From IMG/VR virus record IMGVR_UViG_3300048438_000153, positions 124,001-188,000 of that record: 64,000 nucleotides of DNA; one strand, 5' to 3'. Shown here in pieces: positions 5,512-62,649 of the stretch (its first letter is position 1; the number at the start of each line of letters is the position of its first letter). The notes beneath the pieces are model-generated. The model had not been told where the DNA came from. It made no database searches and saw nothing but the letters and a program-made list of their open reading frames with translations. The translations under genes were made by a program, and so were the position numbers.

Positions 5512-6402
5512 ATGAAATTCTTCGACTTGAACGACAAAGATGACTTCGATTACTTAGCTTTTAAATTCACACGCTCACCTGAGTTTAAGATTTGGAAGTC
5601 TGAAGAAAGAAAGAAAGAGAAGGAAAGAACTAAGAGACATACTCTTGAAGATCTTGAGATCCTGTCTGCCATGCTAACCGCAGAGAATCAGAACCATAGG
5701 AAATGGGTGAAAGACACATCGGGGAAACTCTATGCGAGACTCTATATAAGAGGCACGAACTCATACGTCACTCCAACAGGGGATCTTAACGCGAACGGAG
5801 AGGGCGGTGTGTACCCATCTCAATTAAGAAAGATCAACAAAGCCCTCCGCGCATATCTCACTTACCTAGAAAAGATTATAGATGTCAGAGGAGATGAAGC
5901 AGAAATGGAGTTCATGAGATCGCTAGTAGATTGGGCTCAAGAAAGATACACCATCGAGGGTATTGTCGAGGACACAAAAAAGTACATGGTGAAGAGAGCC
6001 TTTGACTCCTATGGAAAAGCCTACGGAGGCTACTCCACCCACTCCCTACCGACAAGGAACGCGGAGAAGATGGGCGAGAGCAAGCCTAAGAAGAAGAGAA
6101 AAGAGAACCCTAAGTCCATTGACAGGTACGTCAAAGAATACGCAGAGCAGAAAGGCTACAGCTCCGCAGAAGACATCCCTAAGAATGAGAAGGGAAAAGC
6201 CTACGCGATTGCTTGGTCTAGGTACTGCTCAAAGCGCCCTAACTCTCCGCGCTGTCAGAAAGAAAAAGACACTTACTTCCCGAACCGCCCTAATGTGGCT
6301 AAGGGCATCGAGAAGAGCATGGCAGAGAAAAGAAAGAAGCGTCAGAAGAAAGCGATGGCAGAGAGAATCGCGTACCTCTACGAGACATCAAAAGACCTTT
6401 AA
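5512..6402 (+). CDS. Hypothetical basic protein with C-terminal KKAMAERIAYLY motif
   Basis: 296-aa ORF with SD AGGAG; C-terminus matches the R[VI]AxxYL motif family. Confidence 0.7.
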   Translation: MKFFDLNDKDDFDYLAFKFTRSPEFKIWKSEERKKEKERTKRHTLEDLEILSAMLTAENQNHRKWVKDTSGKLYARLYIRGTNSYVTPTGDLNANGEGGVYPSQLRKINKALRAYLTYLEKIIDVRGDEAEMEFMRSLVDWAQERYTIEGIVEDTKKYMVKRAFDSYGKAYGGYSTHSLPTRNAEKMGESKPKKKRKENPKSIDRYVKEYAEQKGYSSAEDIPKNEKGKAYAIAWSRYCSKRPNSPRCQKEKDTYFPNRPNVAKGIEKSMAEKRKKRQKKAMAERIAYLYETSKDL

Positions 6403-6972
6403 GACTACTTGTTTTACAATCTCAGTCATCTCCTCATCACTCATATCTTTCCAATCAACATGGATGACCTGAGTGTCGGGTCTGAGCCGATAAGGGATAT
6501 TCTCAATCTCTCTCTTCAAGTTCTCAAGGTAAGTCAAGCTCAGACCTGACTCATAGCTCCTGTCTCTCTTATGGACTCTTTCTAGCGCGACTTGAGGAGT
6601 AGTGTTAAGAAAGATGCAAGCCGATAAAGTTGGGATCTTAGGCTCAAGTATCTCGTAGTGAGAGACATAACAGTCATGCTCTCTCGCAGACATGATGCCG
6701 TCTTGATGGAGCATATCTGCGAATGGGATATCCCCATACAAAGAGCGGTCAAGAATGAGATCTCCCTCCTCTGTATGGTCTTGGTATCTCCTGTAGAGAA
6801 AGTAAGACTGAAGAGTGTAAGCCCATCGCTTAGGGTCTTCATAGAAGAGGGGGAGGAAAGGGTTGTCGTCAACACTCTCATACTTTGGCGTAAAGTGAGT
6901 GATCTCAGAGAACTTCTTAACGAAAGTAGACTTCCCGACCCCTATTAGCCCTTCAACGGCAATATGCATCAT
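6388..6972 (-). CDS. Deoxynucleoside kinase (dNK family)
   Basis: P-loop IAVEGLIGVGKST, YEDPKRWAYTLQSYFL, DRSLYGD, lid R-x-R-x-x-E. Confidence 0.92.
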   Translation of the reverse strand: MMHIAVEGLIGVGKSTFVKKFSEITHFTPKYESVDDNPFLPLFYEDPKRWAYTLQSYFLYRRYQDHTEEGDLILDRSLYGDIPFADMLHQDGIMSAREHDCYVSHYEILEPKIPTLSACIFLNTTPQVALERVHKRDRSYESGLSLTYLENLKREIENIPYRLRPDTQVIHVDWKDMSDEEMTEIVKQVVLKVF

Positions 6973-7210
6973 GCGCTCCCATTTATCATCAGTAGATGTG
7001 ATGATGGGTTTACCGAATGAAGCCTTAACTTTGAACAGTAATATCTGAGATCACCGAACCGCTTTCTGACGTGATTTGGAGGGTTGACCTCCTAGCCCCT
7101 AATGACTACCCATGTAATCAAACATAGGCTGACACGGTGGTACTATGTTAATAGGAACACACCTCCACATTCGATCCCGTAAGACATGATCTCAGAAAAA
7201 GGAGATATTT

Positions 7211-8299: not shown

Positions 8300-9100
8300 T
8301 TAGCGACGTGAAGCTCGGAGAGCCTTAATAGCCTGAGCTTGGAGACGAGATTGTCTCTTAGTAACAGCAGTCTCGATGTCAGCCATGCGCTCCGCAAAGT
8401 TCATGAAACGCTCATGGAGGTTCATACCGCCGACCATACCACGAATAGTCGCAACAGCCTGACCGCGCTTGAGGTTAGGACCTGTGAAGGTGAACTTGAT
8501 GTTTTGAGGAGTCTGCTTAAGGACGAGAGTGTAGTCTCCAGTGCCTGACACGATAGTGTCGTCACCCATGCGTCTCCAACGCTCATTGAACAAGCCATAG
8601 TTGCTAAGAAGATCATGGACGAGGTTAAACTCAGTGGTGAGATCTACTTGACCCATGCCCGTCTCTTCCATGCCAGCATCCTCGTGAAGAGGAGAAGCAT
8701 CAGGGACATCACGAAGGCCGAGATCATAAGCTTTACGAGCAAGGAGAACCTTAACTTCGTCATACTTCATGATGGTCAGAGTGCGAGCGGGTGGGAAAAT
8801 GAGATGATACCCAACCATATCCACATAGATTTTGTGCTGACGAATGCCAAGGTCAATCACAGGATTATCATCATCAAAATCAAGAGTGGCTCTTTTAAAG
8901 CCTAGCATACGAGCAGACCTAAGAAGGTCTTTCGCATTCTTTCTCATCTCAACGAGGCTCAACCGACCCGGAGCACGCTGTCGGCGTTTCTTATTAGGAG
9001 CAACGTCCATCTGCTTTGAAGGGTAAAGGGCTTGGCGCTCAAGGTGAGCGATCCTGATTTCAAGATCAGAGAGGATTTCTGAAGCTGTTCTTCTCATCAT
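8300..9100 (-). CDS. Leader-bearing protein (MRRTASEIL leader), putative head cargo
   Basis: Starts MMRRTASEILSDLEIRIAHLERQA. Confidence 0.7.
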   Translation of the reverse strand: MMRRTASEILSDLEIRIAHLERQALYPSKQMDVAPNKKRRQRAPGRLSLVEMRKNAKDLLRSARMLGFKRATLDFDDDNPVIDLGIRQHKIYVDMVGYHLIFPPARTLTIMKYDEVKVLLARKAYDLGLRDVPDASPLHEDAGMEETGMGQVDLTTEFNLVHDLLSNYGLFNERWRRMGDDTIVSGTGDYTLVLKQTPQNIKFTFTGPNLKRGQAVATIRGMVGGMNLHERFMNFAERMADIETAVTKRQSRLQAQAIKALRASRR

Positions 9101-9433: not shown

Positions 9434-10804
9434 TCAGAAAAAGTCGGGTAGTTTCTTGGCTCTATTGTTAATCATTCTCACGACATCAAAGGCATCACTG
9501 ATCTCTTGCTGATAGATCTCGATCTTTGTGATAGCCGACTCTAGATCATTCCCTAGCCCCTGACCGTGATTAGAGAGGCGAGCCATACTCCCTAAAAGTT
9601 CACCCATTTCACTGCTGAAATGTTGCTCGGCTACAGGGTTAGCCTCAAGCTCAGAAACAATAGAGTAGAGCATATTCACATTCTGCTCAAAATGAGCTCT
9701 CAGGTCAGACAACTCTTTCATGCTCGCGGTACGAGATGCTTTCTTAAGCATCGCTCGAATCTCACCCCTAGAGTAAGACCCTTGAAGCCTGTTTGTGTTC
9801 TTGTAGAGAAGATGCCTAAGCCTCTTAGCTTCATCTTCCGTGAGTGCTGAGAGGTTTCTCCTAGCCTTACGGATGATCATGTAATCATCTCTAGAAAGAT
9901 ACCTTCCATTAGACTCTAAGTCTGAGAGCATATCTGACTGCGGTTGCTCGCTTTCTGAGAGGATGTCTTTCACAACAGCGAGCTGTTTCGGAGAAAGAGT
10001 GCGCCCCCCATCAAGAACAGCCTTGAGCTTACCTAAGAATGCGCTATTAGGCTGATGAGAAAGAGCCTCCTCAATGAGCTTTGACTGAGCCTCGATCTTG
10101 GGATTCGCAGGAGGGTTGATGATGTCCTGAACGACTTGAGCCTGAGCGTCTGAAAGAACACGTCCTCCGTCAAGAACAGCCTTGAGCTTACCTAAGAATG
10201 CGCTATTAGGCTGATGAGAAAGAGCCTCCTCAATGAGCTTTGACTGAGCCTCGATCTTGGGATTCGCAGGAGGGTCAATAATGTTCTGAACTGCTTGAAT
10301 CTGAGCGTCAGACAACTCCCTACCACCCTCAAACTGAGCCTTAATGTCTTTTAAGAAAGAACTTCTCGGAAGGATCGCGAGAGCACTATCCAAGAGAGCC
10401 TCGATCTGAGGATCAGGATTCGCGATACGATCTTCGACCTCATAGAGAATCGCCTCCGCGCCACCACCAAGAGGATCTCCATTCTTAAGGTCTGTAAGGA
10501 CGCTCTCGAAGAACTTGCTTTTGGGATTGAGCGCGAGAACCCCCTCGACCCTAGAAATAGAAAGGTTATCTACGAGGTGATCTCGTAAGCGCATACGGAC
10601 TTCAGCCGCGCCCATTTCATCATCTGAGAACCCATCAGAAGACTCGACAGTCACCATCGTCTGTTGACCTCTGTTCTTTAGAGTCACTAGGTACTCATCA
10701 AGAAACACGCCCTTGTTTCTCTTAAGACCCAATGTCTCTCGGATCTTCTTGGCGGGTAAAAAGACCCTGAAAGTAGTCTCAATGTCGTTCGCTTTTCTTA
10801 TCAT
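9434..10804 (-). CDS. Hypothetical protein with tandem helical repeats (FLxxIxxxxxGGRxLSxxQ)
   Basis: 456 aa, starts MIRKA; 3-4 repeats of ~50 aa; internal KKASRTAS linker. Confidence 0.75.
   Translation of the reverse strand: MIRKANDIETTFRVFLPAKKIRETLGLKRNKGVFLDEYLVTLKNRGQQTMVTVESSDGFSDDEMGAAEVRMRLRDHLVDNLSISRVEGVLALNPKSKFFESVLTDLKNGDPLGGGAEAILYEVEDRIANPDPQIEALLDSALAILPRSSFLKDIKAQFEGGRELSDAQIQAVQNIIDPPANPKIEAQSKLIEEALSHQPNSAFLGKLKAVLDGGRVLSDAQAQVVQDIINPPANPKIEAQSKLIEEALSHQPNSAFLGKLKAVLDGGRTLSPKQLAVVKDILSESEQPQSDMLSDLESNGRYLSRDDYMIIRKARRNLSALTEDEAKRLRHLLYKNTNRLQGSYSRGEIRAMLKKASRTASMKELSDLRAHFEQNVNMLYSIVSELEANPVAEQHFSSEMGELLGSMARLSNHGQGLGNDLESAITKIEIYQQEISDAFDVVRMINNRAKKLPDFF
10011..10275. 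repeat. Intragenic tandem duplication, period 159 bp (53 aa)
   Basis: 10011-10116 is identical to 10170-10275. Confidence 0.9.
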
Positions 10805-10852
10805 AGCTCTTTCTTTCTCTTAGGTAATCAAAGAAAGAGCTTCTATAAAAGA

Positions 10853-11809
10853 TCAAGTGAAGTCTTCTACGAGATCCTTAACCGCTCTCTTGTACTTAGC
10901 GCGGTCGTGCTTCTTCAGGGCTTTAAACCACTCAGAAACCATGATGAACACCATATCCTCTTCAGCGACTCTAGGAGACAACTCCCCGATTACTTTCTTA
11001 ACCGCAGTGTTGAAGTCATTTCCATGATCTTCCATAAGACACTGAACGGCGTGGCAAGAGTCATTAATGCGTGGGTCATATTCGATCTCAGCGAGAGAGT
11101 GACCCTCGTACCCTGAGCCATAATCAAAGCTACTGTGAGAGCCTACATCAGCACCCCCACTGTCGATCTGCAATATGTGGATAAGCTCATGTTCTAAGAC
11201 TGCCCTGAGAGTCCTTCGACCACTTACTAAGTTGAAATCTTGGGCAAGGTTAATCTCAATACTTCGATCTCTCTTGGAGGTCTGAGCTAGAAAGTTTCTA
11301 GAGCTACGAACAAAGAGGAGCTTGATCCCTTCAACTTCACGCTCTGTTTCCTGAAGATCCTTAGAAAGAATCTTGAGAGGAACGACTTTATCCCAATCTG
11401 ATCGGGCTATTTTCTTAAACTTGTTCCATCCGAGCTTGTACTTTCTCAGACCTGACTCCCCATACACATCTTCCCTCTCTAAAAGCTTAGTGAGGTGGTG
11501 TATAGCGGGGATCATATACCCGAAAGCCCATGAGATCTCGTCTTGAAACTCCTCGACCATCTTGATTAAGAGTTTTGCCGAGTGCTTCTCGATCTCAGCG
11601 TAGTCCTTTGAAGAGAGAGCGCGGTCAATCGCCCTCATACGAGGGAACTGCGTGGGATCACGATACATCCCTAAGCCTGTCTCATCTACGTTGCGTCGAA
11701 AGAGCTCTTGTGAAAGCTCTCTTGACTTAGCTAAGACTTGGCTCACTTCGTCGTAAACTGCATCAGCTACGACTTGATCAGGCTTTCTCCTAGATGCGTA
11801 CCTAAACAT
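10853..11809 (-). CDS. Zincin-like metalloprotease-domain protein (paralog family)
   Basis: VLEHELIH followed by HSLAEIEYDPR and WFKALKKH...KYKRAV, matching the paralogs at 47-54 kb. Confidence 0.7.
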   Translation of the reverse strand: MFRYASRRKPDQVVADAVYDEVSQVLAKSRELSQELFRRNVDETGLGMYRDPTQFPRMRAIDRALSSKDYAEIEKHSAKLLIKMVEEFQDEISWAFGYMIPAIHHLTKLLEREDVYGESGLRKYKLGWNKFKKIARSDWDKVVPLKILSKDLQETEREVEGIKLLFVRSSRNFLAQTSKRDRSIEINLAQDFNLVSGRRTLRAVLEHELIHILQIDSGGADVGSHSSFDYGSGYEGHSLAEIEYDPRINDSCHAVQCLMEDHGNDFNTAVKKVIGELSPRVAEEDMVFIMVSEWFKALKKHDRAKYKRAVKDLVEDFT

Positions 11810-11865: not shown

Positions 11866-11977
11866 AAGTATTTCAGTGCTTCTTTTCGACCAATGTTTCT
11901 AGGGAGGAGAGCATCATCCCTCTGTATAATACGACACGAAGTATTTCAGTGCTTCTTTTCGACCAGTGTTTCTAGGG
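11866..11977. repeat. 39-bp direct repeat (1 mismatch)
   Basis: aagtatttcagtgcttcttttcgacca[a/g]tgtttctaggg at 11866-11904 and 11939-11977. Confidence 0.85.
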
Positions 11978-12309
11978 TAAAGATAAACAAAATTCTGCTC
12001 TCCGTCTTGATCCACCGCTATGATGACGTGAAAGCTCTCTTCCTCACCCTGAGCTGTACTCATTAAAATTTCAAGTAAGATCTGATCGTCGTCTCCATAA
12101 TCATAATCGACGTGTCTCCTGATCACATCAACATTATCGATAATAGAAAACCCTGTCTTAGTCTTGATCTTGCGCTCAATAAAACCTAAAAGATCAATCT
12201 CTTCCGCAGTTGTATAGGGGCGCATATGACTAGTGTAGCCTGATGTTTTCTCAAGCCGAGCAACTCGGACTTGAAGTTCTCTTAAGATAGATGTGGCGGT
12301 TCTTCTCAT
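11914..12309 (-). CDS. Leader-bearing protein, putative head cargo
   Basis: Starts MRRTATSILRELQVRVARLEKTS. Confidence 0.7.
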   Translation of the reverse strand: MRRTATSILRELQVRVARLEKTSGYTSHMRPYTTAEEIDLLGFIERKIKTKTGFSIIDNVDVIRRHVDYDYGDDDQILLEILMSTAQGEEESFHVIIAVDQDGEQNFVYLYPRNTGRKEALKYFVSYYTEG

Positions 12310-17641: not shown

Positions 17642-17677
17642 AGAGCCTTTCTTTTTCTCTGAACGAAAGAGATCACT

Positions 17678-17691: not shown

Positions 17692-17743
17692 CTCACTCAA
17701 GATTCAGGATCTCACCGCCCATATACAGGACTGATCAGATGAC

Positions 17744-18307: not shown

Positions 18308-18362
18308 AGAGCCTTTCTTTTTCTCTGAACGAAAGAGAGCACTATATAAACAATCTACTCAC

Positions 18363-47383: not shown

Positions 47384-47384
47384 A

Positions 47385-50512: not shown

Positions 50513-50526
50513 GAGGTAGCTCTTTC

Positions 50527-52077: not shown

Positions 52078-52136
52078 TGGGTTTGCCCTTTCTAAGCGCA
52101 AGTTTCTTTTCTTAACTTAACGACGAGATAAAAAAA

Positions 52137-54785
52137 TTACTCAACCCTCTGTCTGAGGAGATAAAGGTTAGTCTCGTGAGCGTTCGCCATAGACATAATA
52201 AAGTCGTCCATCCCTAGAGTGAGAACGTCCATTTCTTTCAGCGCCTTATAGATATTCTTGAAGGCTACCTGTAGAGCTTCCTCCACAATCAGAGCGCGGA
52301 GAATAGGGTTGTCTTCAGCCTGAACCTCAGCGATAGGGAGAATCGTGTTCGCCATCAACTGTGCCTGATCTACAGGAGAGACAGCTCGACCTCCGTATGT
52401 ACCCACGATCTTCTCAGCGAGCGTGTCGATCTCTTCGATAAGACTTTGGTAAATCCTCTCTAGTAAGAGATGATCTCCATACTGACTCTCACCCTTCACT
52501 TGCCAATGACTCGTCCAATGAGCCCAATGCGCGCCCCTCAATATGGCGAGCAGAACTTGGAGCGTAGAGAGGGCCATGTCTTTCTCAGAGGCTTTCTTTC
52601 TCCAACCCCCACCTAGCTCTTTGTAAGACTTACTAGCCCAACCGTTCGCATAGGCGCTAGGGTACTTCCTAAAGCCTTCTCCGCCACGAACAGGATTGAT
52701 AATCTTATCACCCCTAGAAACAGGGTTCTTTCTATCGCCTTTAGCGAGGTCTATAATCTCGCCCCACAGCTTAGGGTCAGTAGGCATATTCTCAGCCCCC
52801 CTCTCTATGAAGTTAATGTGCTGAAAAGAGTCCACAGGGATTTGACGATACATCCTAGAAAGAATAGACCTCACGGCCTCTCTCTGCATCGCTTTCTTTC
52901 TTAGTTGCACTTTTCTCGATTTTTGGTTCTTCTGAGTCACGGTCGAACTCCCCCCACCTTCTAGGCGTTTATATCTTTTAGGGTTGTCTCTTCTCCTCTT
53001 ACCTGAAAGGAGAAGCTTGGTCTTATTTCGGAGGTAGTACCTCTTGTTGTCTCTCTTCATCTGACCACGATCTCTACGTTTTTTCTTAACATAGTCGATC
53101 TTGTTCTTTCTGTTGAGAGTCCCCTTAGTATCTCTTTGCTTTCTTCTAGGTGGGCGCAAAGTGATCTTAGCTCTCCCCCGATGCTTCGGGTCAGCTATTC
53201 TTTCTTCTTGAGCCATCTTAGGTCTGCGAGCTAAGCCTGTGGTTTTATTAGCGTCCACATAGGGGTGTCCATATTGATCTCCAGGTATGCCTGAGCTTCT
53301 AGGGCGTTGATGAAGAGGCTTACCATCAGGCTGATTAGGTAGTGCGTTCGGATTCGGTGCTTTCCCGTAGTTAAGAGAAGCTCCTGAGCTGTCTGAAGGC
53401 GTGTTGGAAACAGGAGGCCCTGATCGGTACTCGTCACGCCCTTTCGGATGACCGCTAGGAAGGGGCAGAACTCTATCTCTTTGCGACTTACCATCCTCAT
53501 AGTCTTGACGGCTAGGTTCGGGGGCAGAGGTGTCGTTATCGAGTCCGTCTTGACGACTCTTGCTAACCCAAGTCTGAACGCCCGCTAAGTCCTGTATAAG
53601 TTGCCTAGCAACACGGGTGTTAGAGTCCTCCGTGACAGCCTGATAGAACAAGCCAACAGCTTTGTCCCAAGACTTTCTCTTAAAGTGCTTGAGAGCCCTA
53701 AAGAAAGGACTACTGTTGATGTGTCTACGAACGGTGGAGTTGTTTTTTCTGAGAATGGGATTTCTGAAGTAGCGAGATCTGAACTCCTCAACCTCGTCTA
53801 AGAGTCTCGTATAAAACTCAACGTCATCAAGGGCATGGAAGTTAGCTAAGTTAGGGTCTAAGCCTAAGTCCTTGAGCTCCTGACGCACTTGACGCTCTTT
53901 TGACTTATTATGCTGAGTGATCTTAGTGTCTCTTCTCTTAAAGGGTAAGCCCCCTCTATCTGACAAGCCCTCTCTCTGCCCTATTTCTGACTGAACCGCG
54001 TGGACTAACTCATGCCTAACAGTGCCCTTCACCTGAGCCAAGTCATCTCGGCTGTAATCGGTCTTCTCAGGGATCATAATCTTGATGTGGTGAGCGGAGT
54101 TCCGAAAGCTGTGCGTACCGAGTACGTTTGAATCCATAAACTTAAAAGACAGGACTATGGGATAAACAAATTCAGGGTGAGTGATTCTCGCCTCCACACC
54201 CAAGTCTATGTGGGTGTGGGAGGTCTTAAGATACTCTCGGGGAAACCGACTTTGAGCGAGCTCAAACATATCCTTATCTTGATAAGGATATGACTCTTTC
54301 TTTTCCTTCAGATTTTTAGACACATATAGAAGGCATAAAGAGAGCTTCATAACATCTATCTTGTTATCCCTAAGAACCTTGAGCGACTTATCTGAATTTG
54401 AAAGAGTTTCGAGGTCATTCCAACTAAGAATCTTCTCAAAGAGAGTAAGTGCAAGGTTAGCGTCGTCTCTTATGTTCTTATTTTTATAAGTGTTTTTCTT
54501 AGTGTCTGCGATGACTATTCGGAGTACGTCATGATAGTCATGAAGGAGATCTTCGAGAAGCTCGAATAGCTCTTCCATGTCTTCGTTTTCAAAGTCTTTA
54601 AGATACTCCGAAATCTCTTTCGCCATGCCTTCAAGGTCTTCGATCTCCTCTTCGCTCACTATAGAACTAAAAATTTTAGTGAGAACGTGATCAGCTAACA
54701 CACCCTGAGCTATTTCAGCCACTATTCTAAAAAGCTCGGGAGGAGGCTTCATTAAGCCTGCTTCTTTGTCTGAGAACCTTGCCAT
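52137..54785 (-). CDS. Multi-module protein: zincin + basic modules + Dps/ferritin-like domain
   Basis: KEA-GLMKPP, RHELVH, HALDDVEFYTRL; C-terminal HWQVKG...DHLLLERIY....EIDTLAEKI. Confidence 0.78.
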   Translation of the reverse strand: MARFSDKEAGLMKPPPELFRIVAEIAQGVLADHVLTKIFSSIVSEEEIEDLEGMAKEISEYLKDFENEDMEELFELLEDLLHDYHDVLRIVIADTKKNTYKNKNIRDDANLALTLFEKILSWNDLETLSNSDKSLKVLRDNKIDVMKLSLCLLYVSKNLKEKKESYPYQDKDMFELAQSRFPREYLKTSHTHIDLGVEARITHPEFVYPIVLSFKFMDSNVLGTHSFRNSAHHIKIMIPEKTDYSRDDLAQVKGTVRHELVHAVQSEIGQREGLSDRGGLPFKRRDTKITQHNKSKERQVRQELKDLGLDPNLANFHALDDVEFYTRLLDEVEEFRSRYFRNPILRKNNSTVRRHINSSPFFRALKHFKRKSWDKAVGLFYQAVTEDSNTRVARQLIQDLAGVQTWVSKSRQDGLDNDTSAPEPSRQDYEDGKSQRDRVLPLPSGHPKGRDEYRSGPPVSNTPSDSSGASLNYGKAPNPNALPNQPDGKPLHQRPRSSGIPGDQYGHPYVDANKTTGLARRPKMAQEERIADPKHRGRAKITLRPPRRKQRDTKGTLNRKNKIDYVKKKRRDRGQMKRDNKRYYLRNKTKLLLSGKRRRDNPKRYKRLEGGGSSTVTQKNQKSRKVQLRKKAMQREAVRSILSRMYRQIPVDSFQHINFIERGAENMPTDPKLWGEIIDLAKGDRKNPVSRGDKIINPVRGGEGFRKYPSAYANGWASKSYKELGGGWRKKASEKDMALSTLQVLLAILRGAHWAHWTSHWQVKGESQYGDHLLLERIYQSLIEEIDTLAEKIVGTYGGRAVSPVDQAQLMANTILPIAEVQAEDNPILRALIVEEALQVAFKNIYKALKEMDVLTLGMDDFIMSMANAHETNLYLLRQRVE

Positions 54786-54829: not shown

Positions 54830-55396
54830 TTAAGAAAGAAACTCGCTTACACCTTCAGGAGTAACTACGACGTAAGACCCGAAGTTCTGCACAAACCCCT
54901 CTCTCTCGTACTCCAAGAGAGCGCGGAAGTAGTTACTTGGTAACTCTCCTCTAGTGATGACAACCTCACCATCATCAATCATCTTTTCTGAGATGATGTC
55001 AGCGATCTCCTGAAAGAAAGCACCCGAAGCGCCCGCCACCCTAACCTCAGAGTTAATATTCCTCGCCGCTTCGGGGGCGGGGTTATACTTAGAGGCGATG
55101 TCTACAGTCTCACGATCACTGTGAGGGAGGCGTTGACGGTAGAAATCAGCACCCATCGTGATGAGAGCGTAGTTAGTCTTATCTAGGTGTCTCTCGATCT
55201 TAGCGAGGGTGTCGGGGATCGTGAGAAAGGTATCTCCACAGAGACGGTAGACTTCTTCGATAGCGGGCGAGTCTTGAAGCGCCTTAACCATCTGATCTAC
55301 TGCTATTCTTAGACGGTAAGCCTCAACCCTTGCGTCAGAGACGCCACCCGCCAAAATTGACCAAGATGCTTGGCTCGATGCTTTCTTATCTCTCAT
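54830..55396 (-). CDS. Linker-motif protein, putative head cargo
   Basis: Starts MRDKKAS; internal RVA-G linker. Confidence 0.65.
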   Translation of the reverse strand: MRDKKASSQASWSILAGGVSDARVEAYRLRIAVDQMVKALQDSPAIEEVYRLCGDTFLTIPDTLAKIERHLDKTNYALITMGADFYRQRLPHSDRETVDIASKYNPAPEAARNINSEVRVAGASGAFFQEIADIISEKMIDDGEVVITRGELPSNYFRALLEYEREGFVQNFGSYVVVTPEGVSEFLS

Positions 55397-55447
55397 TGTC
55401 TTTCTCCTACTTTGAGTGTCTGAGAAAGACTGAGTATCAAGAGAGTA

Positions 55448-56467
55448 TTAAGCCCCGACCCCTTTCTTGATTACCTTCACTACGCCGTCGCTCTCGACTT
55501 CCATGATCGCCTCAAGAATCTCAGGATGACCCTTATAAAGCTCAAGGGCGAGAGACGCTCTCTTACGCCAGTGTGGAGACATATCCCAATCAATCCCTAC
55601 AGGTAGACTCTTAACCTTACTATTGTCCTCGCCTACTGTGACTGCTCCCTGAGTAGGCTGAACCTCACCCTCAACAGCAGAAAGGATCTGCTGTGCTTCT
55701 TTCTCTTGCTCGTCTGCAAGAGAAATCTCAGGCTCAGAAGCCTCCTCCTCAACAACAAATTCTTCTACGTCATCGTCGAGTAAGTCTGAAAGCTCGATGT
55801 CTTCTTCAGCGGAGGGCTCTTTAACAGGCTTCTCAGAAGCAAGAGCCTCTCTCTGTAGGTTCTCAAGGCGAGAAATCTCAGAACTCGCTTGTGATCCATC
55901 AGAAATCACAGTCTTTTGCTTAGAAGCTGTCTTAATCTTGATCTTCCCTACTGACTCAGCACCCTGAGACTCAGCGAGTCCTCCATCAGATGTTTCCGCG
56001 CTTGAAGCTGAGTTAATGGTAGCGCCACTCTTAGTCTCAACCTTAGAGACTGCGATCATGTCATCGTCCTGAGACTCTACGACCAAAGGGAACTTCTTTG
56101 TTGTGGGCTCAATCTTATCCGAAATCGTGACGTCATTCTTAGAAGAGGTCTTAGAAGAGGTCTTAGAGACTTCTGCGACAGCACGCTCCTCGTCATAGAC
56201 AGTCTCGATCTTCATAACTTTCTTAGCTGGTGCGGGGGCGGTGATTTCTTTCTCAACAGGAGCTGAAGCAGTCCCATCTGAGAGCTTGAGCCAACCGCGC
56301 TTGATTCCCGCCTTAAGCTCAGGCATCGGAGTCTCCTTGCCTGAAAACTTAAGGGTGTAGCCATCGAACTCTACGAGATCGCCTTTGGTGAGGTTGCGCT
56401 CAAGACGACCTAAGTGAACGGTGGTCTGTGCCTCCAAAGTCTGATAGTTTCCTCTAACGAACTCCAT
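55448..56467 (-). CDS. Acidic low-complexity hypothetical protein
   Basis: ORF with SD GGAGG; 12-bp repeat (SKTS). Confidence 0.7.
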   Translation of the reverse strand: MEFVRGNYQTLEAQTTVHLGRLERNLTKGDLVEFDGYTLKFSGKETPMPELKAGIKRGWLKLSDGTASAPVEKEITAPAPAKKVMKIETVYDEERAVAEVSKTSSKTSSKNDVTISDKIEPTTKKFPLVVESQDDDMIAVSKVETKSGATINSASSAETSDGGLAESQGAESVGKIKIKTASKQKTVISDGSQASSEISRLENLQREALASEKPVKEPSAEEDIELSDLLDDDVEEFVVEEEASEPEISLADEQEKEAQQILSAVEGEVQPTQGAVTVGEDNSKVKSLPVGIDWDMSPHWRKRASLALELYKGHPEILEAIMEVESDGVVKVIKKGVGA

Positions 56468-56555
56468 TGTTTCCTCCAATGTGTCATGGTTTAGTGTCAG
56501 TTATACCCTTACCATAAGAGTTTTATAAATAAACATAGGGTGAGGGGACACAAAC

Positions 56556-58993: not shown

Positions 58994-59872
58994 TTAGCGA
59001 GTAACGGTGAGGCGAGCAAGACCGCGTGGGTTGTACGCGCCGATACCCAAATTCTCAAAGACTGAGAAACCGATGGTGCGAGCCTTCGGATCGTCAGCAG
59101 AAAGAACAGTAAGCTCAGTACGGACAGGGATGCGTCCGAACATCTCAGGCTCACAGCAGACGTACACAGTGCCGACAGGAACTAGACGGCTAGTGATGAT
59201 CTGTGCGCCCCAAAGAGTAGCCTGAAGACCAGTCTTAAGGAGCGCTGCTTGGCTCTCGATGTCGAGAATGTCGCGACCAAACTTACGGATGTCAGCGTAG
59301 TCACGAGCGTTCATGAAGACGCGAGAGACACGGAGGTCGTGACGCTCGATAAGAGCGTATGCGTCAGCGAGAACAGCACCGTTAAGAGGAGCGATGACAG
59401 GAATGTCAGCGTTAGTCTGACCAGGGAGACTGTCGAAGCCTTGAGTCGCAACCGCGTCGAGGATAGCGAATACACGCTCGTCCTCAGCCGCCTGAATCTG
59501 AGCGCGAGCCAAGTCTTGAGCCCTCTCGATCAGATCGAAGCGACGCTCCTTGATCTGAGTGAGTGGGATCTCAGGGTTTGATGCGATCTCGAAAAGAGGG
59601 AAGATCACACGACGTGGCTTGGTGATAGCGAGGATGTTCTCGCCCTCTTCACCTACCACGAACGCGGTCACGTCAGGGTCTTTGTCGTAGATCGGAAGCG
59701 CACCATCAGGAAGTTGCTCTACGAGGAAAGTCTTACGACCAACGCTCGTATAGTCACGACGGAGACGGAGAGGTTGTGTCATTGAAGCGGCTAGCTTCGC
59801 ACGACCTTGTGGGGTCTTAATGTAGTCAGCAATGATCTTTTGCTTTACTGCGTTATCGACGTTGTTACTCAT
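58994..59872 (-). CDS. Major capsid protein (HK97 fold)
   Basis: 292 aa; order protease-scaffold-decoration-MCP followed by a terminator; IQAAEDERVFAILD spine helix, VFMNARDYADI, LWGAQIITS. Confidence 0.82.
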   Translation of the reverse strand: MSNNVDNAVKQKIIADYIKTPQGRAKLAASMTQPLRLRRDYTSVGRKTFLVEQLPDGALPIYDKDPDVTAFVVGEEGENILAITKPRRVIFPLFEIASNPEIPLTQIKERRFDLIERAQDLARAQIQAAEDERVFAILDAVATQGFDSLPGQTNADIPVIAPLNGAVLADAYALIERHDLRVSRVFMNARDYADIRKFGRDILDIESQAALLKTGLQATLWGAQIITSRLVPVGTVYVCCEPEMFGRIPVRTELTVLSADDPKARTIGFSVFENLGIGAYNPRGLARLTVTR

Positions 59873-59888
59873 TGTAGACTCCTTTCTA

Positions 59889-60497
59889 TCAGATGCGTTG
59901 GTCGTAGACTAACTCATCAGAGTTTGAGTCAGGAACAATTTTAAGAATACCGATGGTAAGAGCAGTCGCCTTCGAGACAGCACCTGCGATGGTGACGTCA
60001 GCGTCAGTCACATCTGCGTTGCTACTAGAAGTCAAGTAACCATTGATAGAAGCACAGAGAGTCTCACCTACAGAATAAGTGAGATCAACACCAGCGTTAG
60101 CGAGATCGCCCTTAGTCTCATAGAGCTTGTTGCCATAAGTACCTTGCGCTGAAACGTAAGGACCTCTGTTCGATGCAACACCAGGCTGATTCTCAAAAGC
60201 ATTTCCAACAGCGTTGTTGATAAATACACCGAGAACAGCAGTAGCGTTAAGAACGCCACCGTGAGTGTTGTCGCCTGAGTTATCGGCAAAAGCGATAGAA
60301 CCACTAAGTACACCGCGAACTACGCCATCAAGAAGACCTGATGCCTCAGTTGCATTTGTTGCGTTCGTAGGGGGGTTAGTCTGAGTGAAAGCACTCGCAG
60401 AAAGCTGACCGACGGTGTTACGAACACCGACGTGCAAAATTCTGAGAGCAGAGCTTGCTTCAGTAAACCCACCACTAGCTTGTCCAAGTAGAGCCAT
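59889..60497 (-). CDS. Putative capsid decoration/cement protein
   Basis: Immediately upstream of MCP; Gly/Ala/Thr-rich; YSVGETL...GYLT pattern. Confidence 0.6.
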   Translation of the reverse strand: MALLGQASGGFTEASSALRILHVGVRNTVGQLSASAFTQTNPPTNATNATEASGLLDGVVRGVLSGSIAFADNSGDNTHGGVLNATAVLGVFINNAVGNAFENQPGVASNRGPYVSAQGTYGNKLYETKGDLANAGVDLTYSVGETLCASINGYLTSSSNADVTDADVTIAGAVSKATALTIGILKIVPDSNSDELVYDQRI

Positions 60498-60639
60498 AGT
60501 ATTTCTCCTAGAAGCTCATACTCTCTGTTTTCAAGAGAGTAGTGTGTTAATAAAGATAGGGGCGGGAAACCCAACCCCCCGAAAGGTTCAATAATAAAGC
60601 AGAGAGATATAAAGGAACTAAAGTACCCTTATTTCTTTC

Positions 60640-62649
60640 TTAACCGAAGTACTTGCTGACGTCGGGAGCTGACTCCCAAAGCTTAGAAAGCTCGTCAGAA
60701 GCAGAGCTTGCTTCACGGCTGATGTTACCGAGTGTCTTAACAGACGCTTGGCGAGCCTGAGTCTGAGGGCGGAAAGAAGCTGATTTCTGAGTAGTAGCGG
60801 TAGCCTCCTCTTCAGACGCCTCCTCCTCAGATGCCTCTTCATCAGCGGCTTGGAAGATACGAGCGAGCTTAGGATCGACATCGACATTATCTGAAGCCAT
60901 GTGAAGACCCATTACGTCCTCAGCCATGTCCTCAGCCATATCCTCAGCCATATCCTCAGCCATCATGGTTGCCTCGTGATCCTCAGCCATCATGGTTGCC
61001 TCGTGATCCTCAGCCATATGATGCATCGCCATTTCTTCTTCAGCAGTCATGTCGAATTGGCTAGGATCATTCTGATCAGCCATCATCATCTCTGCTTCCA
61101 TCTCAGCGAGCATCTCATTAAGCATTGCTTGCTCTTCAGAAGCTAGACGCATCTCATCGAAATGAGCTTTCTTCTTCTTAGGAACACGTTGACCTTCAAC
61201 ATTGTGCTTGTAAGGGCGAGGTCTTGCCTTCTGACCCTGTGGGTTTGACTTTGAAGGCCAACGCTCAGGGTTGTTCACATAGTAGGTGTGGTTGTAACTA
61301 GCCTTTGATCCAGGCTCTTGCAACAATTCTTTGCGAGCTTTAGTCTTAGGTCGTTTACCCTTCTGACCACTGCGATTCCAATTCCAAATAGCCTTTCTAT
61401 CTTCATCAGAAAGATAGTCTTGCCAATCGGGATTAGCCTTACCGTAATCCTTAATGCCCTTACCGCGACGACCCCAAGCCTCTTTGTCCTCAGCCATCAT
61501 GTCCATCTCAGCCATGATCTCTGCGAACTCTTCATCAGAAAGAATATCCTCAGCCATCAACTCGTCGTTGGCTTTTTTCTCTTTTTTTCCTTCTGATTGA
61601 GGAACACCCCAAAAGAGATGTTTGTACTTCTGATAGTACTCTTTGTTGTGCTCTTGCTTGTCCTCATCAGTCCAACCCGTAGTTCCGGGAGAAGAGCGGT
61701 ACTGACCTCTCATCTTGGAGTCCATATACTCAAATTTGTCTAGAGTTTTTCCGTAGGGCTCTTGCGTGTGAGGAGATTTAAGTTTGCCTGGATCCGTGAA
61801 TGACTTCCATCCATCTTCTTTCTTGCCCCAAGCACCTTTAGCAACGATGTTCATCTCAGCCATGATCTCAGCCATGCGGTCTGCATCGCCCATGTGAGAA
61901 GCCTCGTGCATCATCTCAGCGAGAATGGCCATGTCCTCTGACATCATTTCTGAGGCGAGTTTCTTAGTAGGACCTTCGCCCTCTTCCTCGTCGAGAACCT
62001 CAACGCTCTCGTCGTCGCCCTCATGACCTGTCTCTTGCTGAACTACGTCCTCTGCCATGCGACGCATTTTAGAAGCGAGACGGGCGTTAGCCGCTTTGAG
62101 CATGGCGATTTCTTCAGCCATGTCTTCTTCAGCCATCATCTCAGCCATGACGTTATCTACGCCCTCGTCATCACCCTCGTAGCCTGTAGCCTCTTGCATC
62201 GCATCCTCTCCAAGAAAGTCTGAAGCGATACGCTGGATCTTGGCATTGATCTGACGTGATGGGAGATCCATGTAACGAAGGGCAAGATCCTCGATCTCAT
62301 CCTGTGATGCAGTCCTACCGAGACGGCTCTCAGCAATCTCGATGCACTTAGAAGCCTTGCGCTCCATAGCCTTGCGGAGATTCTGCTCGTAGAGGTCAGA
62401 AGTCTCCTCATAGTCTGAAATGATGTCCTCAGTAGCTGCGGGATGATCTGCTTCCCAACTGTATGAAGCGGGGGCAGGTCCTGAGCGGTAAGGACCTTCG
62501 TGAACGCCCTCGCCAAATTCTGAGTCGATGCCATAAGCGTCAACTGAGGGCTGTGCTTGTGATGCGGGATGACCGAAGCTCTCGAAGCCCTGATCATCAT
62601 AACCTGGTAGGCTAGAAGTGTTAGCCCTACGGAAACTATTCCTAGACAT
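60640..62649 (-). CDS. Putative scaffold/core protein with MAE repeats
   Basis: Between protease and capsid genes; very acidic and Met-rich with many MAE(D) units; probable start MSRNSFRRA with SD AAGGA. Confidence 0.65.
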   Translation of the reverse strand: MSRNSFRRANTSSLPGYDDQGFESFGHPASQAQPSVDAYGIDSEFGEGVHEGPYRSGPAPASYSWEADHPAATEDIISDYEETSDLYEQNLRKAMERKASKCIEIAESRLGRTASQDEIEDLALRYMDLPSRQINAKIQRIASDFLGEDAMQEATGYEGDDEGVDNVMAEMMAEEDMAEEIAMLKAANARLASKMRRMAEDVVQQETGHEGDDESVEVLDEEEGEGPTKKLASEMMSEDMAILAEMMHEASHMGDADRMAEIMAEMNIVAKGAWGKKEDGWKSFTDPGKLKSPHTQEPYGKTLDKFEYMDSKMRGQYRSSPGTTGWTDEDKQEHNKEYYQKYKHLFWGVPQSEGKKEKKANDELMAEDILSDEEFAEIMAEMDMMAEDKEAWGRRGKGIKDYGKANPDWQDYLSDEDRKAIWNWNRSGQKGKRPKTKARKELLQEPGSKASYNHTYYVNNPERWPSKSNPQGQKARPRPYKHNVEGQRVPKKKKAHFDEMRLASEEQAMLNEMLAEMEAEMMMADQNDPSQFDMTAEEEMAMHHMAEDHEATMMAEDHEATMMAEDMAEDMAEDMAEDVMGLHMASDNVDVDPKLARIFQAADEEASEEEASEEEATATTQKSASFRPQTQARQASVKTLGNISREASSASDELSKLWESAPDVSKYFG
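60916..61017. repeat. Coding tandem repeats (12-bp MAED and 27-bp MAEDHEATM units)
   Basis: Repeated tcctcagccat units. Confidence 0.85.

What the first reader, a model, noticed from the sequence alone, without database searches (positions are those of the whole stretch)
5512..62649. Candidate system: capsid-addressed, protease-processed modular cargo proteins
Seen: ~15 otherwise unrelated ORFs share three short helical motifs. (A) MRRTA(S/T)xILxxLxxR[IV]AxLE at 8300, 11914, 16934 and 17744. (B) [LV][IV][RK]xAY[EA]NxxxR at 29846 and three times in 50527. (C) R[VI]A followed by hydrophobic residues (xxYL/FL) at 5512, 19756, 31772, 45737, 52137 and 57008. Recognisable enzyme modules start at or just after [KR]-x-[AS] tripeptides (KSA/RKA/KEA-GL..PP, KQS-C, KQA-2H domain). 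The same sites are frequent in the scaffold (RRA, RKAS, RTAS, RIAS, KSAS, RQAS, REAS). Established: T4 internal proteins carry a capsid-targeting leader removed by gp21; phiKZ-type heads contain protease-processed paralog families; herpesvirus assemblins, which share the fold of HK97-type prohead proteases, cleave Ala-Ser bonds. Inference: these motifs are prohead-docking tags and cut sites of the protease at 62675-64000, so the phage packages polyproteins that are cut into an injected enzyme payload. I cannot tell whether this has already been described for relatives.
Basis: partly seen in the sequence, partly recalled or inferred. Interest (0 to 1): 0.92.

Follow-up and report, generated by a model that had tools for sequence, protein, structure and literature searches.

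The report
Cut-site motif and address tags, megaphage head
This giant phage, a relative of Bacillus phage G, carries a four-residue motif ([RK]-x-A-S) packed into its head protease and scaffold, plus two short helical tags fused to many unrelated proteins. Together they look like a capsid-loading and trimming system of the phage T4 kind, not described before for this group.

Summary

- **Motifs A and B are real.** A is the first 22-31 residues of four proteins that are otherwise unrelated. B occurs four times in two proteins.
- **Motif C is not a separate motif.**
- **The cut site needs refining.** The sharper [RK]-x-A-S is enriched (43 seen, 14 expected, z about 8). Only R/K, A and S are tolerated at their positions, and scrambled versions are not enriched.
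- **Where the sites sit.** They concentrate in the scaffold-like protein (9), outside the protease's catalytic domain, and in a subset of unknown proteins. The major capsid protein, sheath and recognisable enzymes are at background.
- **Relatives.** All 45 related head loci show the excess, phage G included.
- **Tags and sites go together.** About half of distinct tag copies are followed within 14 residues by [RK]-x-A-[SGA] (background 2-6%). Tag B matches 3,666 protein clusters worldwide.

The best reading is a prohead serine protease that cuts at [RK]-x-A|S, with removable loading tags. Cleavage, packaging and injection are all inferred, not shown. No description of this was found in the literature held.

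The parts
62675..64000 (-). Prohead serine protease, cut by the window end. The full protein has 472 aa (L003:9818-11236). [RK]xAS sites lie after the catalytic domain at 63224-63235 (KSAS), 62906-62917 (KIAS), 62819-62830 (RIAS) and 62780-62791 (KVAS). A conserved N-terminal RVAS site lies just outside the window.
   Evidence: phrog_18299 'head maturation protease' at 1.2e-15. BFVD fold matches to prohead proteases, including phage G gp19 at 9e-14. H130 and S181 are invariant and H207 nearly so. In 89 orthologues site density is 1.07 per 1000 aa inside the catalytic domain and 10.3 outside.
60640..62685 (-). Scaffold-like protein of 681 aa, acidic (21% D+E) and Met-rich, with nine [RK]xAS sites at residues 109, 124, 152, 202, 242, 513, 634, 645 and 657.
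   Evidence: It lies between the protease and the major capsid protein. Sites are listed. Thirty orthologues hold 218 sites against 22 expected. Site positions are conserved in 27/30, 29/30 and 21/30 sequences while the x residue varies.
58994..60497 (-). Major capsid protein (58994-59872) and decoration-like protein (59889-60497). Neither has a site in the window. Listed as context.
   Evidence: phrog_2522 'major head protein' at 3.9e-51. The MCP is 38% identical to phage G gp27. MCP orthologues hold 5 sites against 3.7 expected, and decoration orthologues 0 against 2.7.
8300..9100 (-). Leader A protein of 266 aa. The leader is at 9032-9100.
11914..12309 (-). Leader A protein of 131 aa. It carries a variant leader (RTAT in place of RTAS) at 12244-12309.
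16934..17641 (-). Leader A protein of 235 aa. The leader plus a second TASE element is at 17549-17641. Further sites are KKAS (residue 162) and KFAS (residue 227).
   Evidence: Metagenomic orthologues keep the leader, and two of them have RTAS at the second element.
17744..18307 (-). Leader A protein of 187 aa. The leader is at 18215-18307. Its upstream DNA and leader are nearly identical to those of 16934-17641.
29846..30421 (-). Tag B protein of 191 aa. The N-terminal tag plus K-Q-A-A is at 30302-30421, followed by a 2H phosphoesterase-like domain.
   Evidence: Pfam tRNA_lig_CPD at 7e-08. Alignment A6.
50527..52101 (-). A 524-aa protein with three tag B copies: B1 plus RTAS at 51985-52077, B2 plus KEAG at 51871-51984, and a C-terminal B3 at 50530-50652. 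It also has KSAS at residue 389.
52137..54785 (-). An 882-aa multidomain protein. An HExxH paralogue domain (residues 7-385) begins at K-E-A-G-L (54741-54767). A basic middle region follows. KKAS (52587-52598) sits directly before a Dps/ferritin-like domain (52140-52583).
   Evidence: for the paralogue domain. DUF5856, phrog_858, phrog_3636 and PDB Dps hits begin at residues 733-735.
47385..50512 (-). Two further paralogues of the HExxH domain. 47385-48515 is the whole 376-aa protein, with the domain starting at K-S-A-G-L (48462-48488). 48512-50512 holds the domain at residues 291-666, after R-K-A-G-L (49625-49654), and has KTAS at 49967-49978.
   Evidence: BLASTP at 7.6e-62 and 3.9e-34. Alignment A4.
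45737..47398 (-). A 553-aa protein with a GNAT-like region (residues 47-137) and RVAS at 46841-46852.
   Evidence: phrog_10691 at 7.5e-21, matching part of a 3,925-position profile, and Pfam Acetyltransf_7 below threshold.
54830..56479 (-). Two conserved genes downstream of the head module. 54830-55396 (188 aa) has KKAS at residues 4-7. 55448-56479 (343 aa) has KTAS (residue 183), conserved in 9 of 11 orthologues, and KRAS (residue 306).
   Evidence: Orthologues hold 20 sites against 3.6 expected, and 7 against 1.5.
19756..21687 (-). A 643-aa protein with four sites. KKAS and KEAS lie in the last 35 residues (19759-19863). There is a possible Ntn-hydrolase self-processing site, KQS|C, at residues 155-158.
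31772..32929 (-). A 385-aa protein with three sites. One is KTAS, seven residues before the C-terminus (KTAS and that tail together span 31775-31807).
9434..11809 (-). 9434-10804 (456 aa) has tandem KKAS-RTAS at 9722-9745. 10853-11809 (318 aa) has RYAS at residues 3-6.

Best explanation
The window comes from a huge myophage of the Bacillus phage G lineage. The proposed mechanism has four steps.

1. **Cutting.** The head module encodes a prohead serine protease of the HK97/assemblin fold class. Its most likely recognition motif is [RK]-x-A-S, with G or A sometimes replacing S. By analogy with assemblins, the cut probably falls between A and S.
2. **Self-processing and scaffold removal.** The protease would free its own catalytic domain at conserved sites on both sides of it. 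It would cut the scaffold-like protein at nine sites, most fragments being short.
3. **Loading.** Two short helical tags recruit otherwise unrelated proteins into the assembling prohead, probably by binding the scaffold core or the protease itself.
   - Tag A is an N-terminal [RK]-x-A-S followed by a two-heptad amphipathic helix.
   - Tag B is a helix-Pro-helix unit, roughly L-[IV]-[RK]-x-A-[YH]-E-N-P-x-x-R-x-x-L-L-P.
4. **Trimming.** The tags are then clipped at the flanking sites, as the T4 capsid targeting sequence is removed by gp21.

**Shown here:** the motif's specificity, its distribution and its conservation; the modularity of the tags; the coupling of tags to sites; and the protease's identity by HMM and fold.

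**Inferred:** that the motif is cleaved, where the scissile bond lies, that tagged proteins enter capsids, and that any of them is delivered into the host.
For: **The motif is real and specific.**
- The window has 43 sites against 13.8-14.1 expected (z 8.1-8.3). Nine divergent relatives have 156 against 47 (z 16.5). Reversed and scrambled versions give ratios of 0.8-1.1.
- Position 1 accepts only R or K (3.1-3.7x), position 3 only A (3.3x), and position 4 only S (3.3x). At x, the residues G, D, N and P are disfavoured.

**Its distribution fits a protease.**
- Protease plus scaffold-like protein: 14 sites in 1,153 aa (Poisson P 4e-13).
- MCP, decoration and sheath: 1 in 2,093 aa.
- Nine Pfam-recognised enzymes: 2 in 2,101 aa.
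- All other ORFs: 3 in 7,637 aa.
- In 89 protease orthologues the density is 1.07 per 1000 aa inside the catalytic domain and 10.3 outside. The N-terminal site is present in 72/89, or 87/89 allowing G or A.
- In the AF2 model these two flanking sites fall in low-confidence segments (residues 1-32 and 265-321) around a confident core.

**It is conserved across the clade.**
- All 45 related loci show an excess of sites (weakest in two loci, z 1.4 and 2.2), including phage G (16 against 4.8) and Tunturi_5 (15 against 6.9).
- Scaffold site positions are kept in 27/30 and 29/30 sequences while x varies.

**The protease call is supported**.

**Tag A is modular and selected.**
- There are 29 distinct IMG/VR proteins of 72-364 aa (a few cut at a contig end), and the tag is always N-terminal.
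- Between two window copies, 7 codon differences are synonymous and 2 are not.

**Tag B is modular, widespread and linked to head genes.**
- In the complete 485-kb relative LR745208.1, nine ORFs carry it. Two lie in or beside the head module, one of them between the scaffold and decoration genes.
- A profile of the tag matches 3,666 cluster representatives at E<=1e-3.

**Tags and sites are coupled.**
- [RK]xA[SGA] lies within 14 aa after tag A in 17/36 cases (background 2.2%) and after tag B in 14/28 (background 6.2%).
- In 150 unrelated tag B proteins, [RK]xAS is seen 176 times against 66 expected (z 12.5). C-terminal copies are preceded by a site in 24/43 cases, and N-terminal copies are followed by one in 38/91 (background 7.8%).

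**Some sites sit exactly at domain boundaries.** KKAS lies directly before the Dps-like domain, and K-x-A-G sits at the start of all three HExxH paralogues.
Against: - There is no experimental evidence for cleavage or packaging in this clade. No cleavage data for phage G could be read: Gonzalez et al. 2020 is not held, and the 2025 phage G proteomics paper has no supplements held.
- The four large genes at 45737-54785 (50527-52101 left out) are not significantly enriched for strict sites, with 4 in 2,477 aa.
- About half of the tag copies lack an adjacent site.
- In leader A the first site sits at residues 3-7, so cutting there would remove only five or six residues. That is odd for a pure cut site. 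It suggests that 'site plus helix' may be one recognition unit.
- The window's own second element reads LTAS, not [RK]TAS.
- The 150 tag B proteins analysed are the top-scoring hits and are biased towards multi-copy proteins.
- Fold matches to solved structures are not significant. Herpesvirus proteases recur among the top hits, but with probability <=0.41.
- Phage G and Tunturi_5 have site enrichment but no detectable tag A or B.
Confidence: 0.6

Rival explanations
1. [RK]-x-A-S is a binding or modification motif and is not cleaved. It could be a docking site for the protease or capsid interior, or a basophilic kinase site with R/K at -3 of the serine. The tags would then be assembly or oligomerisation helices that remain on the mature proteins.
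For: - The motif has R/K three residues before an invariant Ser.
- In leader A it lies at residues 3-7, where cutting achieves little.
- Sites are often followed by an amphipathic acidic helix, as if site plus helix were one unit.
- About half of the tags have no second site.
Against: - The invariant Ala before Ser, and the replacement of Ser by Gly or Ala at aligned positions, fit a small P1/P1' pair better than a phospho-acceptor.
- Sites bracket the catalytic domain of the protease itself, in segments predicted to be disordered, and riddle the scaffold-like protein. That is the classic layout of prohead protease substrates.
- No kinase was identified in the window.
Confidence: 0.15
2. The tags address proteins to something other than the capsid interior, such as a tail or baseplate assembly, an intracellular structure, or a protein hub like the triple-tagged 50527 product. 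The flanking sites might then be cut by a different peptidase, for example the HExxH paralogues.
For: - Leader A genes in the window lie 40-50 kb from the head module, near an actin-like gene.
- Three HExxH-domain paralogues are encoded next to the tag B hub.
- Tag B occurs in up to seven copies per protein and at either terminus, which would suit a multivalent interaction module.
Against: - The same tetrapeptide that flanks the tags is concentrated in the prohead protease and the scaffold.
- In relatives, tag A genes (L017, L043) and tag B genes (LR745208.1) sit inside or beside the head module.
- The zincin nature of the HExxH domain was not established: Pfam, PHROG and PDB sequence searches all gave no hit.
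Confidence: 0.15
3. The shared N-termini are by-products of recent duplication or cassette recombination (a shared promoter, ribosome-binding site and first codons), and the tetrapeptide excess is a compositional artefact.
For: 16934 and 17744 share nearly identical upstream DNA and leader. The AS dipeptide itself is somewhat enriched, 152 seen against 113 expected.
Against: - Scrambled and reversed motifs are not enriched.
- The excess is confined to particular proteins and to particular parts of them.
- The leader is kept at the protein level through synonymous changes, 7 against 2.
- It is found on 29 unrelated cargo proteins in about two dozen contigs.
- Tag B is found in 3,666 clusters.
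Confidence: 0.03

Closest known systems
Phage T4 capsid targeting sequence (CTS) of internal proteins IPII and IPIII, removed by the gp21 prohead protease
   Same: - A short N-terminal leader shared by otherwise unrelated small proteins and followed by the protease's motif.
- The protease also destroys the scaffold core and processes itself.
- Gene order is portal, core, protease, scaffold, capsid.
- The T4 leader suffices to load foreign proteins (PMC9958956, read).
   Different: - There is no sequence similarity.
- The motif here is [RK]-x-A-S, not the Glu-ending T4 motif. [LI]-x-E is only mildly enriched and A-x-E not at all.
- The tags are longer (about 20-30 aa).
- There are two tag families, and tag B also works at C-termini and in multiple copies.
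- The capsid protein here has no sites in the window.
Herpesvirus assemblin with its R-site and M-site (Ala|Ser) processing of the protease-scaffold precursor
   Same: - An invariant Ala-Ser pair.
- A site immediately after the catalytic domain, then a helical C-terminal domain, and sites close to the C-terminal end of the scaffold.
- Herpesvirus proteases recur among the top, though non-significant, PDB fold hits.
   Different: - The upstream position is basic (R/K) here, not hydrophobic.
- The protease and scaffold are separate genes.
- The position of the scissile bond is not determined.
Processed head proteins and ejection proteins of phiKZ-like and SPN3US giant phages
   Same: Many head proteins carry N-terminal propeptides removed by the prohead protease, and there are paralogue families among the internal head proteins (PMC10052503, read).
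   Different: - That group's motif ends in Glu.
- No shared modular leader has been reported there.
- The two phage lineages are unrelated.
HK97 protease C-terminal targeting tail, and encapsulin cargo-loading peptides
   Same: Short terminal peptides that dock cargo to the inside of an HK97-fold shell and work on foreign proteins (own knowledge).
   Different: Encapsulin peptides are not removed by a protease. The sequences are unrelated, and tag B is often multi-copy.
Polyvalent proteins of phages and conjugative elements (Iyer et al. 2017, PMC5512222)
   Same: Large multidomain proteins, predicted to be packaged, that combine enzymatic modules with HExxH peptidase domains. An assemblin-like peptidase is noted in some. 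The GNAT region of 45737 matches part of a 3,925-position PHROG profile.
   Different: The window's proteins are smaller, with two or three modules. The zincin fold of the HExxH domain was not verified, and that paper describes no tag or tetrapeptide code.

Membership tests
Prohead (capsid maturation) serine protease, HK97/assemblin fold class | Sequence-profile similarity to known prohead proteases | tested here: met
   phrog_18299 'head maturation protease' at E 1.2e-15, and phrog_2774 at 1.1e-25. It is homologous to phage G gp19 and Tunturi_5 gp331, both annotated as head maturation protease. There is no Pfam hit.
Prohead (capsid maturation) serine protease, HK97/assemblin fold class | Characteristic fold | tested here: met
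   The AF2 model has pLDDT 80-95 in the catalytic domain. BFVD gives 105 hits at E<=1e-3, many named prohead (serine) protease, HK97 family, COG3740 or XkdF. These targets are themselves predicted structures. Against solved structures nothing is significant, though herpesvirus proteases recur among the top hits.
Prohead (capsid maturation) serine protease, HK97/assemblin fold class | Conserved catalytic Ser and His | tested here: inconclusive
   H130 and S181 are invariant and H207 nearly so in 89 sequences. S181, in the segment G-x-M-x-x-M-S-M-G, aligns with the Ser at residue 114 of HK97 gp4 and residue 140 of T4 gp21. Those hhalign alignments are not significant, at probability 2.3% and 0.3%. 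That these are the catalytic residues is from memory.
Prohead (capsid maturation) serine protease, HK97/assemblin fold class | Gene placed between the portal and the scaffold/capsid genes | tested here: met
   The order in L003 is TerL, portal (phrog_16240), a 1146-aa ORF, protease, scaffold-like, decoration-like, MCP.
T4-type capsid targeting sequence system | A short terminal leader shared by otherwise unrelated proteins | tested here: met
   Tag A: four window proteins with no similarity beyond the leader, and 29 distinct proteins in IMG/VR, always N-terminal. Tag B.
T4-type capsid targeting sequence system | Leader followed by the prohead protease's cleavage motif | tested here: inconclusive
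   [RK]xA[SGA] lies within 14 aa in 17/36 (tag A) and 14/28 (tag B) cases, against 2-6% background. That this motif is the cleavage motif is itself inferred.
T4-type capsid targeting sequence system | Homology to the T4 leader and its Glu-ending motif | tested here: not met
   The leader sequences here have a different composition. A-x-E is not enriched and [LI]-x-E only mildly so (z 3.2), without clustering in the scaffold. This is an analogue, not a member.
T4-type capsid targeting sequence system | Tagged proteins are found inside heads with the leader removed, and the leader suffices to load a reporter | not testable with these tools
   This needs virion proteomics with N-terminomics and reporter fusions.
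Assemblin-type Ala|Ser processing | Small P1 Ala and P1' Ser at sites that flank the catalytic domain and lie near the scaffold C-terminus | tested here: inconclusive
   A and S are invariant. Site positions are given. The scissile bond was not determined.
Assemblin-type Ala|Ser processing | A hydrophobic residue two positions before the Ala | tested here: not met
   That position is R or K only (3.1-3.7x), and no hydrophobic residue exceeds 1.5x there.
Polyvalent proteins (packaged multidomain effectors) | Several unrelated effector domains plus a zincin-like peptidase in one polypeptide | tested here: inconclusive
   52137 combines an HExxH domain with a Dps-like domain, and 45737 has a GNAT-like region. 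The zincin fold was not tested because too few homologues were retrieved.

The most novel reading that the evidence does not exclude
Megaphages of the phage G lineage use a readable 'loading code'. Multivalent helical tags (A and B) sit at N-termini, at C-termini and between modules, each bracketed by [RK]-x-A|S cut sites. Together they load polyproteins into the prohead, and the maturation protease then dices them into a defined set of free proteins (Dps-like, GNAT, 2H phosphoesterase, HExxH peptidase and many unknowns) that are delivered with the DNA. If so, the packaged and injected proteome of thousands of uncultured huge phages could be predicted from sequence alone. The tags would also be portable tools for loading proteins into large capsids.
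Probability: 0.25. Interest if true: 0.85.

Novelty: new variant of a known kind. Interest (0 to 1): 0.66.

Why it matters
- **It opens the phage G lineage to prediction.** How proteins are chosen for packaging into phage heads is understood for very few phages. Even for T4 the docking partner of the targeting sequence is unknown (PMC9958956). No maturation motif, targeting signal or packaged proteome was found described for the phage G lineage, which holds the largest cultured phage and many uncultured megaphages.
- **It gives sequence signatures that can be searched for.** A four-residue motif with about ten-fold enrichment in scaffolds, plus two tag families, lets one nominate protease substrates and candidate packaged proteins directly from metagenomes. 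Tag B alone matches 3,666 protein clusters.
- **It is directly testable.** Existing phage G mass-spectrometry data, or simple co-expression in E. coli, would test it.
- **It may yield tools.** It offers candidate peptides for loading foreign proteins into very large capsids.
- **It bears on evolution.** An Ala-Ser motif in a phage protease of the assemblin fold class adds to the picture of shared ancestry between phage and herpesvirus maturation.

Tried and rejected
No enrichment, so it was replaced by the tetrapeptide.
- **T4-like ([LI]-x-E) and phiKZ-like ([AGS]-x-E, A-x-E) motifs.** These gave no signal or only a mild one. 'TASE' occurs only in the leader family and once elsewhere.
- **Motif C as a third tag.** Rejected as heterogeneous.
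- **Flanking preferences around the site.** None is strong.
- **Protease searches.** Pfam and PDB sequence searches found nothing. The first AF2 model, from 13 sequences, was too poor to use. A second model from 89 sequences worked.
- **hhalign against single HK97 gp4 and T4 gp21 sequences.** Not significant.
- **Word-index search with tag B.** It returned only three candidates.
- **tblastn of tag A against isolated phages.** No match.
- **HExxH paralogue domain.** Pfam, PHROG and PDB searches gave no hit, and only four related loci were found. No structure was predicted for it.
- **Mycobacteriophage Myrna head locus.** Only a weak excess, 7 seen against 3.3 expected, so the motif is not claimed for cluster C phages.
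- **Literature.** Gonzalez et al. 2020 on the phage G proteome is not held, and the 2025 phage G paper has no supplements held. Literal motif strings appear in no relevant paper.
- **PHROG searches of about 20 further ORFs.** These gave no functional names.

Full report
**What the window is.**
- The window is part of a 275-kb IMG/VR contig.
- Its major capsid protein (58994-59872, phrog_2522 at 3.9e-51) is 88.6% identical to that of the 485-kb uncultured phage LR745208.1. It is 47% identical to Tunturiibacter phage Tunturi_5 and 38% to Bacillus phage G gp27.
- The head module reads, on the minus strand: protease (62675-64000), a 681-aa scaffold-like ORF (60640-62685), a decoration-like ORF (59889-60497), then the capsid protein.
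- In the same contig, TerL (which contains an intein), a portal (phrog_16240) and a 1146-aa ORF lie upstream.
- The window end cuts the protease. The full protein has 472 aa.

**Checking the observation.**
- Motif A is exactly the N-terminus of four ORFs, and motif B occurs once in 29846-30421 and three times in 50527-52101.
- Beyond the leader, the four motif A proteins share no detectable similarity.
- Motif C is a loose R[VI]A pattern. Its excess is partly made of R[VI]AS sites and the leader's own R[IV]A.

**A sharper motif.**
- [RK]-x-A-S occurs 43 times against about 14 expected in the window (z 8.1-8.3). In nine divergent relatives it occurs 156 times against 47 expected (z 16.5). Reversed or scrambled arrangements give ratios of 0.8-1.1.
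- A position-by-position scan shows that only R or K, only A and only S are favoured at positions 1, 3 and 4 (3.1-3.7x). T, V, K, Q and L are preferred at x, and G, D, N and P are avoided.
- Flanking positions show no strong preference.

**Where the sites are.** Site counts by class in the window:

| Class | Sites | Residues |
|---|---|---|
| Protease plus scaffold-like protein | 14 (P 4e-13) | 1,153 |
| Capsid, decoration-like and sheath | 1 | 2,093 |
| Nine Pfam-recognised enzymes (dNK, TK, SOD, FMN reductase, pyrimidine-dimer glycosylase, Toprim, glutamine synthetase, volactin, DUF481) | 2 | 2,101 |
| All remaining ORFs | 3 | 7,637 |

- The rest of the excess lies in the leader A proteins, in 54830 and 55448, and in 9434, 10853, 19756 and 31772. 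That last group was picked after seeing the counts, so its P value is not independent.
- Sites outside the protease and scaffold lie within 50 residues of a terminus in 16 of 30 cases, where 36% is expected (P 0.036).

**Conservation.**
- All 45 related head loci show an excess of sites (weakest in two loci, z 1.4 and 2.2). This includes phage G (16 against 4.8) and Tunturi_5 (15 against 6.9).
- Thirty scaffold orthologues hold 218 sites against 22 expected. Capsid orthologues hold 5 against 3.7, and decoration orthologues 0 against 2.7.
- Individual scaffold sites are kept in 27/30, 29/30 and 21/30 sequences while the x residue changes.
- In 89 protease orthologues the density is 1.07 per 1000 aa inside the catalytic domain and 10.3 outside. 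One site about 25 residues from the N-terminus is present in 72/89, or 87/89 allowing G or A. Another lies just after the catalytic domain and is conserved as far as Tunturi_5 and phage G.
- In the AF2 model (pLDDT 72.6, core 80-95), both sites fall in low-confidence segments that flank the core. The remaining sites lie at helix ends in a confident C-terminal helical domain.
- Mycobacteriophage Myrna, a more distant relative by capsid protein, shows only a weak excess.

**Is it a protease?**
- PHROG annotates it as a head maturation protease at 1.2e-15.
- The model matches 105 predicted viral structures at E<=1e-3. These include phage G gp19 and many entries named prohead serine protease, HK97 family, COG3740 or XkdF.
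- Against solved structures nothing is significant, although herpesvirus proteases recur among the top hits.
- H130 and S181 are invariant and H207 nearly so. S181 aligns with the serine at residue 114 of HK97 gp4 and residue 140 of T4 gp21 in non-significant hhalign alignments.

**The tags.**

*Tag A*
- A degenerate DNA pattern for leader A finds 44 stretches in about two dozen IMG/VR contigs and 29 distinct proteins of 72-364 aa (a few cut at a contig end). The motif always starts at residues 2-4 of the protein, and the sequences downstream are unrelated.
- One 290-kb contig has at least seven copies.
- Two window copies differ by seven synonymous and two non-synonymous codons. Copies 16934 and 17744 share nearly identical upstream DNA, which points to cassette exchange.
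- The helix has a 3-4-3 hydrophobic spacing typical of coiled coils. This is read from the sequence.

*Tag B*
- It is found in 20 IMG/VR stretches, mostly at residues 6-11 of proteins of 150-575 aa.
- In the complete genome LR745208.1, nine ORFs carry it. Eight have it at the true N-terminus. One of those is encoded between the scaffold and decoration genes, and another a few genes after the capsid gene. That genome has no tag A.
- A profile of 14 tag B copies matches 3,666 representatives of 50%-identity clusters at E<=1e-3, with up to seven copies per protein.
- No Pfam family covers it. Only sub-threshold DUF6193 hits appear.

**Tags and sites go together.**
- Within 14 residues after tag A, 17 of 36 distinct proteins have [RK]-x-A-[SGA] (background 2.2%). 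After tag B, 14 of 28 do (background 6.2%).
- In the 150 best tag B proteins of the global library, [RK]-x-A-S occurs 176 times against 66 expected (z 12.5). Sites precede 24 of 43 C-terminal copies and follow 38 of 91 N-terminal copies (background 7.8%). A strict site lies within 16 residues upstream of 75 of 277 copies (background 3.3%).
- That list is biased towards multi-copy proteins.
- Internal copies read '[RK]-x-A-S-L-R-x-K...', while N-terminal copies read 'M-[ST]-x-L-R-x-K...'. A cut between A and S would therefore recreate the native N-terminal form. This is an inference.

**Multidomain candidates.**
- 47385 (the whole protein), 48512 (residues 291-666) and 52137 (residues 7-385) share a domain with an invariant HExxH. 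In all three it begins K-x-A-G-L-[IM]-[RK]-P-P, after N-terminal extensions of 9, 289 and 6 residues.
- In 52137, KKAS (residues 730-733) directly precedes a Dps/ferritin-like domain. In some relatives that domain sits on a shorter protein.
- 45737 has a GNAT-like region that matches part of a 3,925-position PHROG profile.
- As a class, however, these large genes are not enriched for strict sites.
- 'KQS-C' in 19756 more likely marks Ntn-hydrolase self-processing.

**Interpretation.**
- The layout matches what is known for T4 and for herpesvirus assemblin. In T4 the leader is removed, the scaffold destroyed and the protease self-processed (PMC9958956). Assemblin has Ala|Ser sites after the protease domain and near the scaffold's C-terminus (own knowledge).
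- I therefore read [RK]-x-A-S as the cleavage motif of this protease, and tags A and B as removable prohead-loading tags.
- A variant that the data do not exclude is that 'site plus helix' is a single substrate-recognition unit that binds the protease itself.
- Delivery of the cargo into the host is conjecture.

**Novelty.** Searches of the held literature found no cleavage motif, targeting signal or tag for this lineage. The concept is known, but the motif, the two tags and their scale are new. I class this as a new variant of a known kind.

Noticed in passing
window 12369-13364 (-): A full-length actin-like 'Volactin' protein (Pfam PF25216, E 4.5e-72), encoded among the leader A genes.
   Followed up: no
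L003:1304-4438 (same contig, outside the window): The large terminase is 1,044 aa long and contains an intein with a LAGLIDADG homing-endonuclease domain (Pfam Intein_splicing and LAGLIDADG_3).
   Followed up: no
Protease residues 184-207 (window about 63290-63361): The catalytic serine is followed by an invariant Cys cluster (C184, C191, C194, C205, with H207 nearly invariant). It resembles a zinc-ribbon insertion, which is unusual for a prohead protease.
   Followed up: partly
LR745208.1 compared with the window head module: The capsid protein is 88.6% identical to LR745208.1, but the adjacent protease is only 39.7% identical. The head module is mosaic.
   Followed up: no
window 17642-17701 and 18308-18367, plus upstream regions of many minus-strand genes: 16934 and 17744 share nearly identical upstream DNA. 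A CTTTAT[AT]-like box lies about 35-50 nt upstream of the leader A genes, the decoration-like gene, 55448, 29846, 19756, 31772, 9434, 18363 and 24790. It may be a late promoter. This was not tested statistically.
   Followed up: partly
window 23386-25494 (-): Three tandem paralogues of 224, 232 and 234 aa (27-35% identical) with no family match.
   Followed up: no
window 9434-10804 (-) and 33139-34212 (+): These two ORFs share an internally repeated unit of about 50 aa (three BLASTP alignments in different registers).
   Followed up: no
window 44636-45655, 31128-31751, 30491-31144, 27277-27705, 6388-6972, 37423-38013: A set of auxiliary genes: glutamine synthetase-like, Fe/Mn superoxide dismutase, FMN reductase, pyrimidine-dimer DNA glycosylase, deoxynucleoside kinase and thymidine kinase.
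   Followed up: no
window 21730-22482 (-): A DUF481 protein (E 1.6e-10) whose N-terminus looks like a signal peptide. This is unexpected in a phage.
   Followed up: no
window 1-2772 (-): An open frame of more than 923 aa runs off the left end of the window. It has no family match and one [RK]xAS site.
   Followed up: partly
window 19756-21687 (-), residues 155-158: 'KQS|C' precedes a weak match to the AAT (Ntn-hydrolase) family. It may be a self-activating Cys-nucleophile hydrolase with a site-flanked C-terminal tail.
   Followed up: partly
window 38010-42809 (-): The 1,599-aa ORF has only a sub-threshold match to the C-terminal domain of phage tail sheaths. It is 33% identical to an ORF in a related locus and is unusually long for a sheath.
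   Followed up: no
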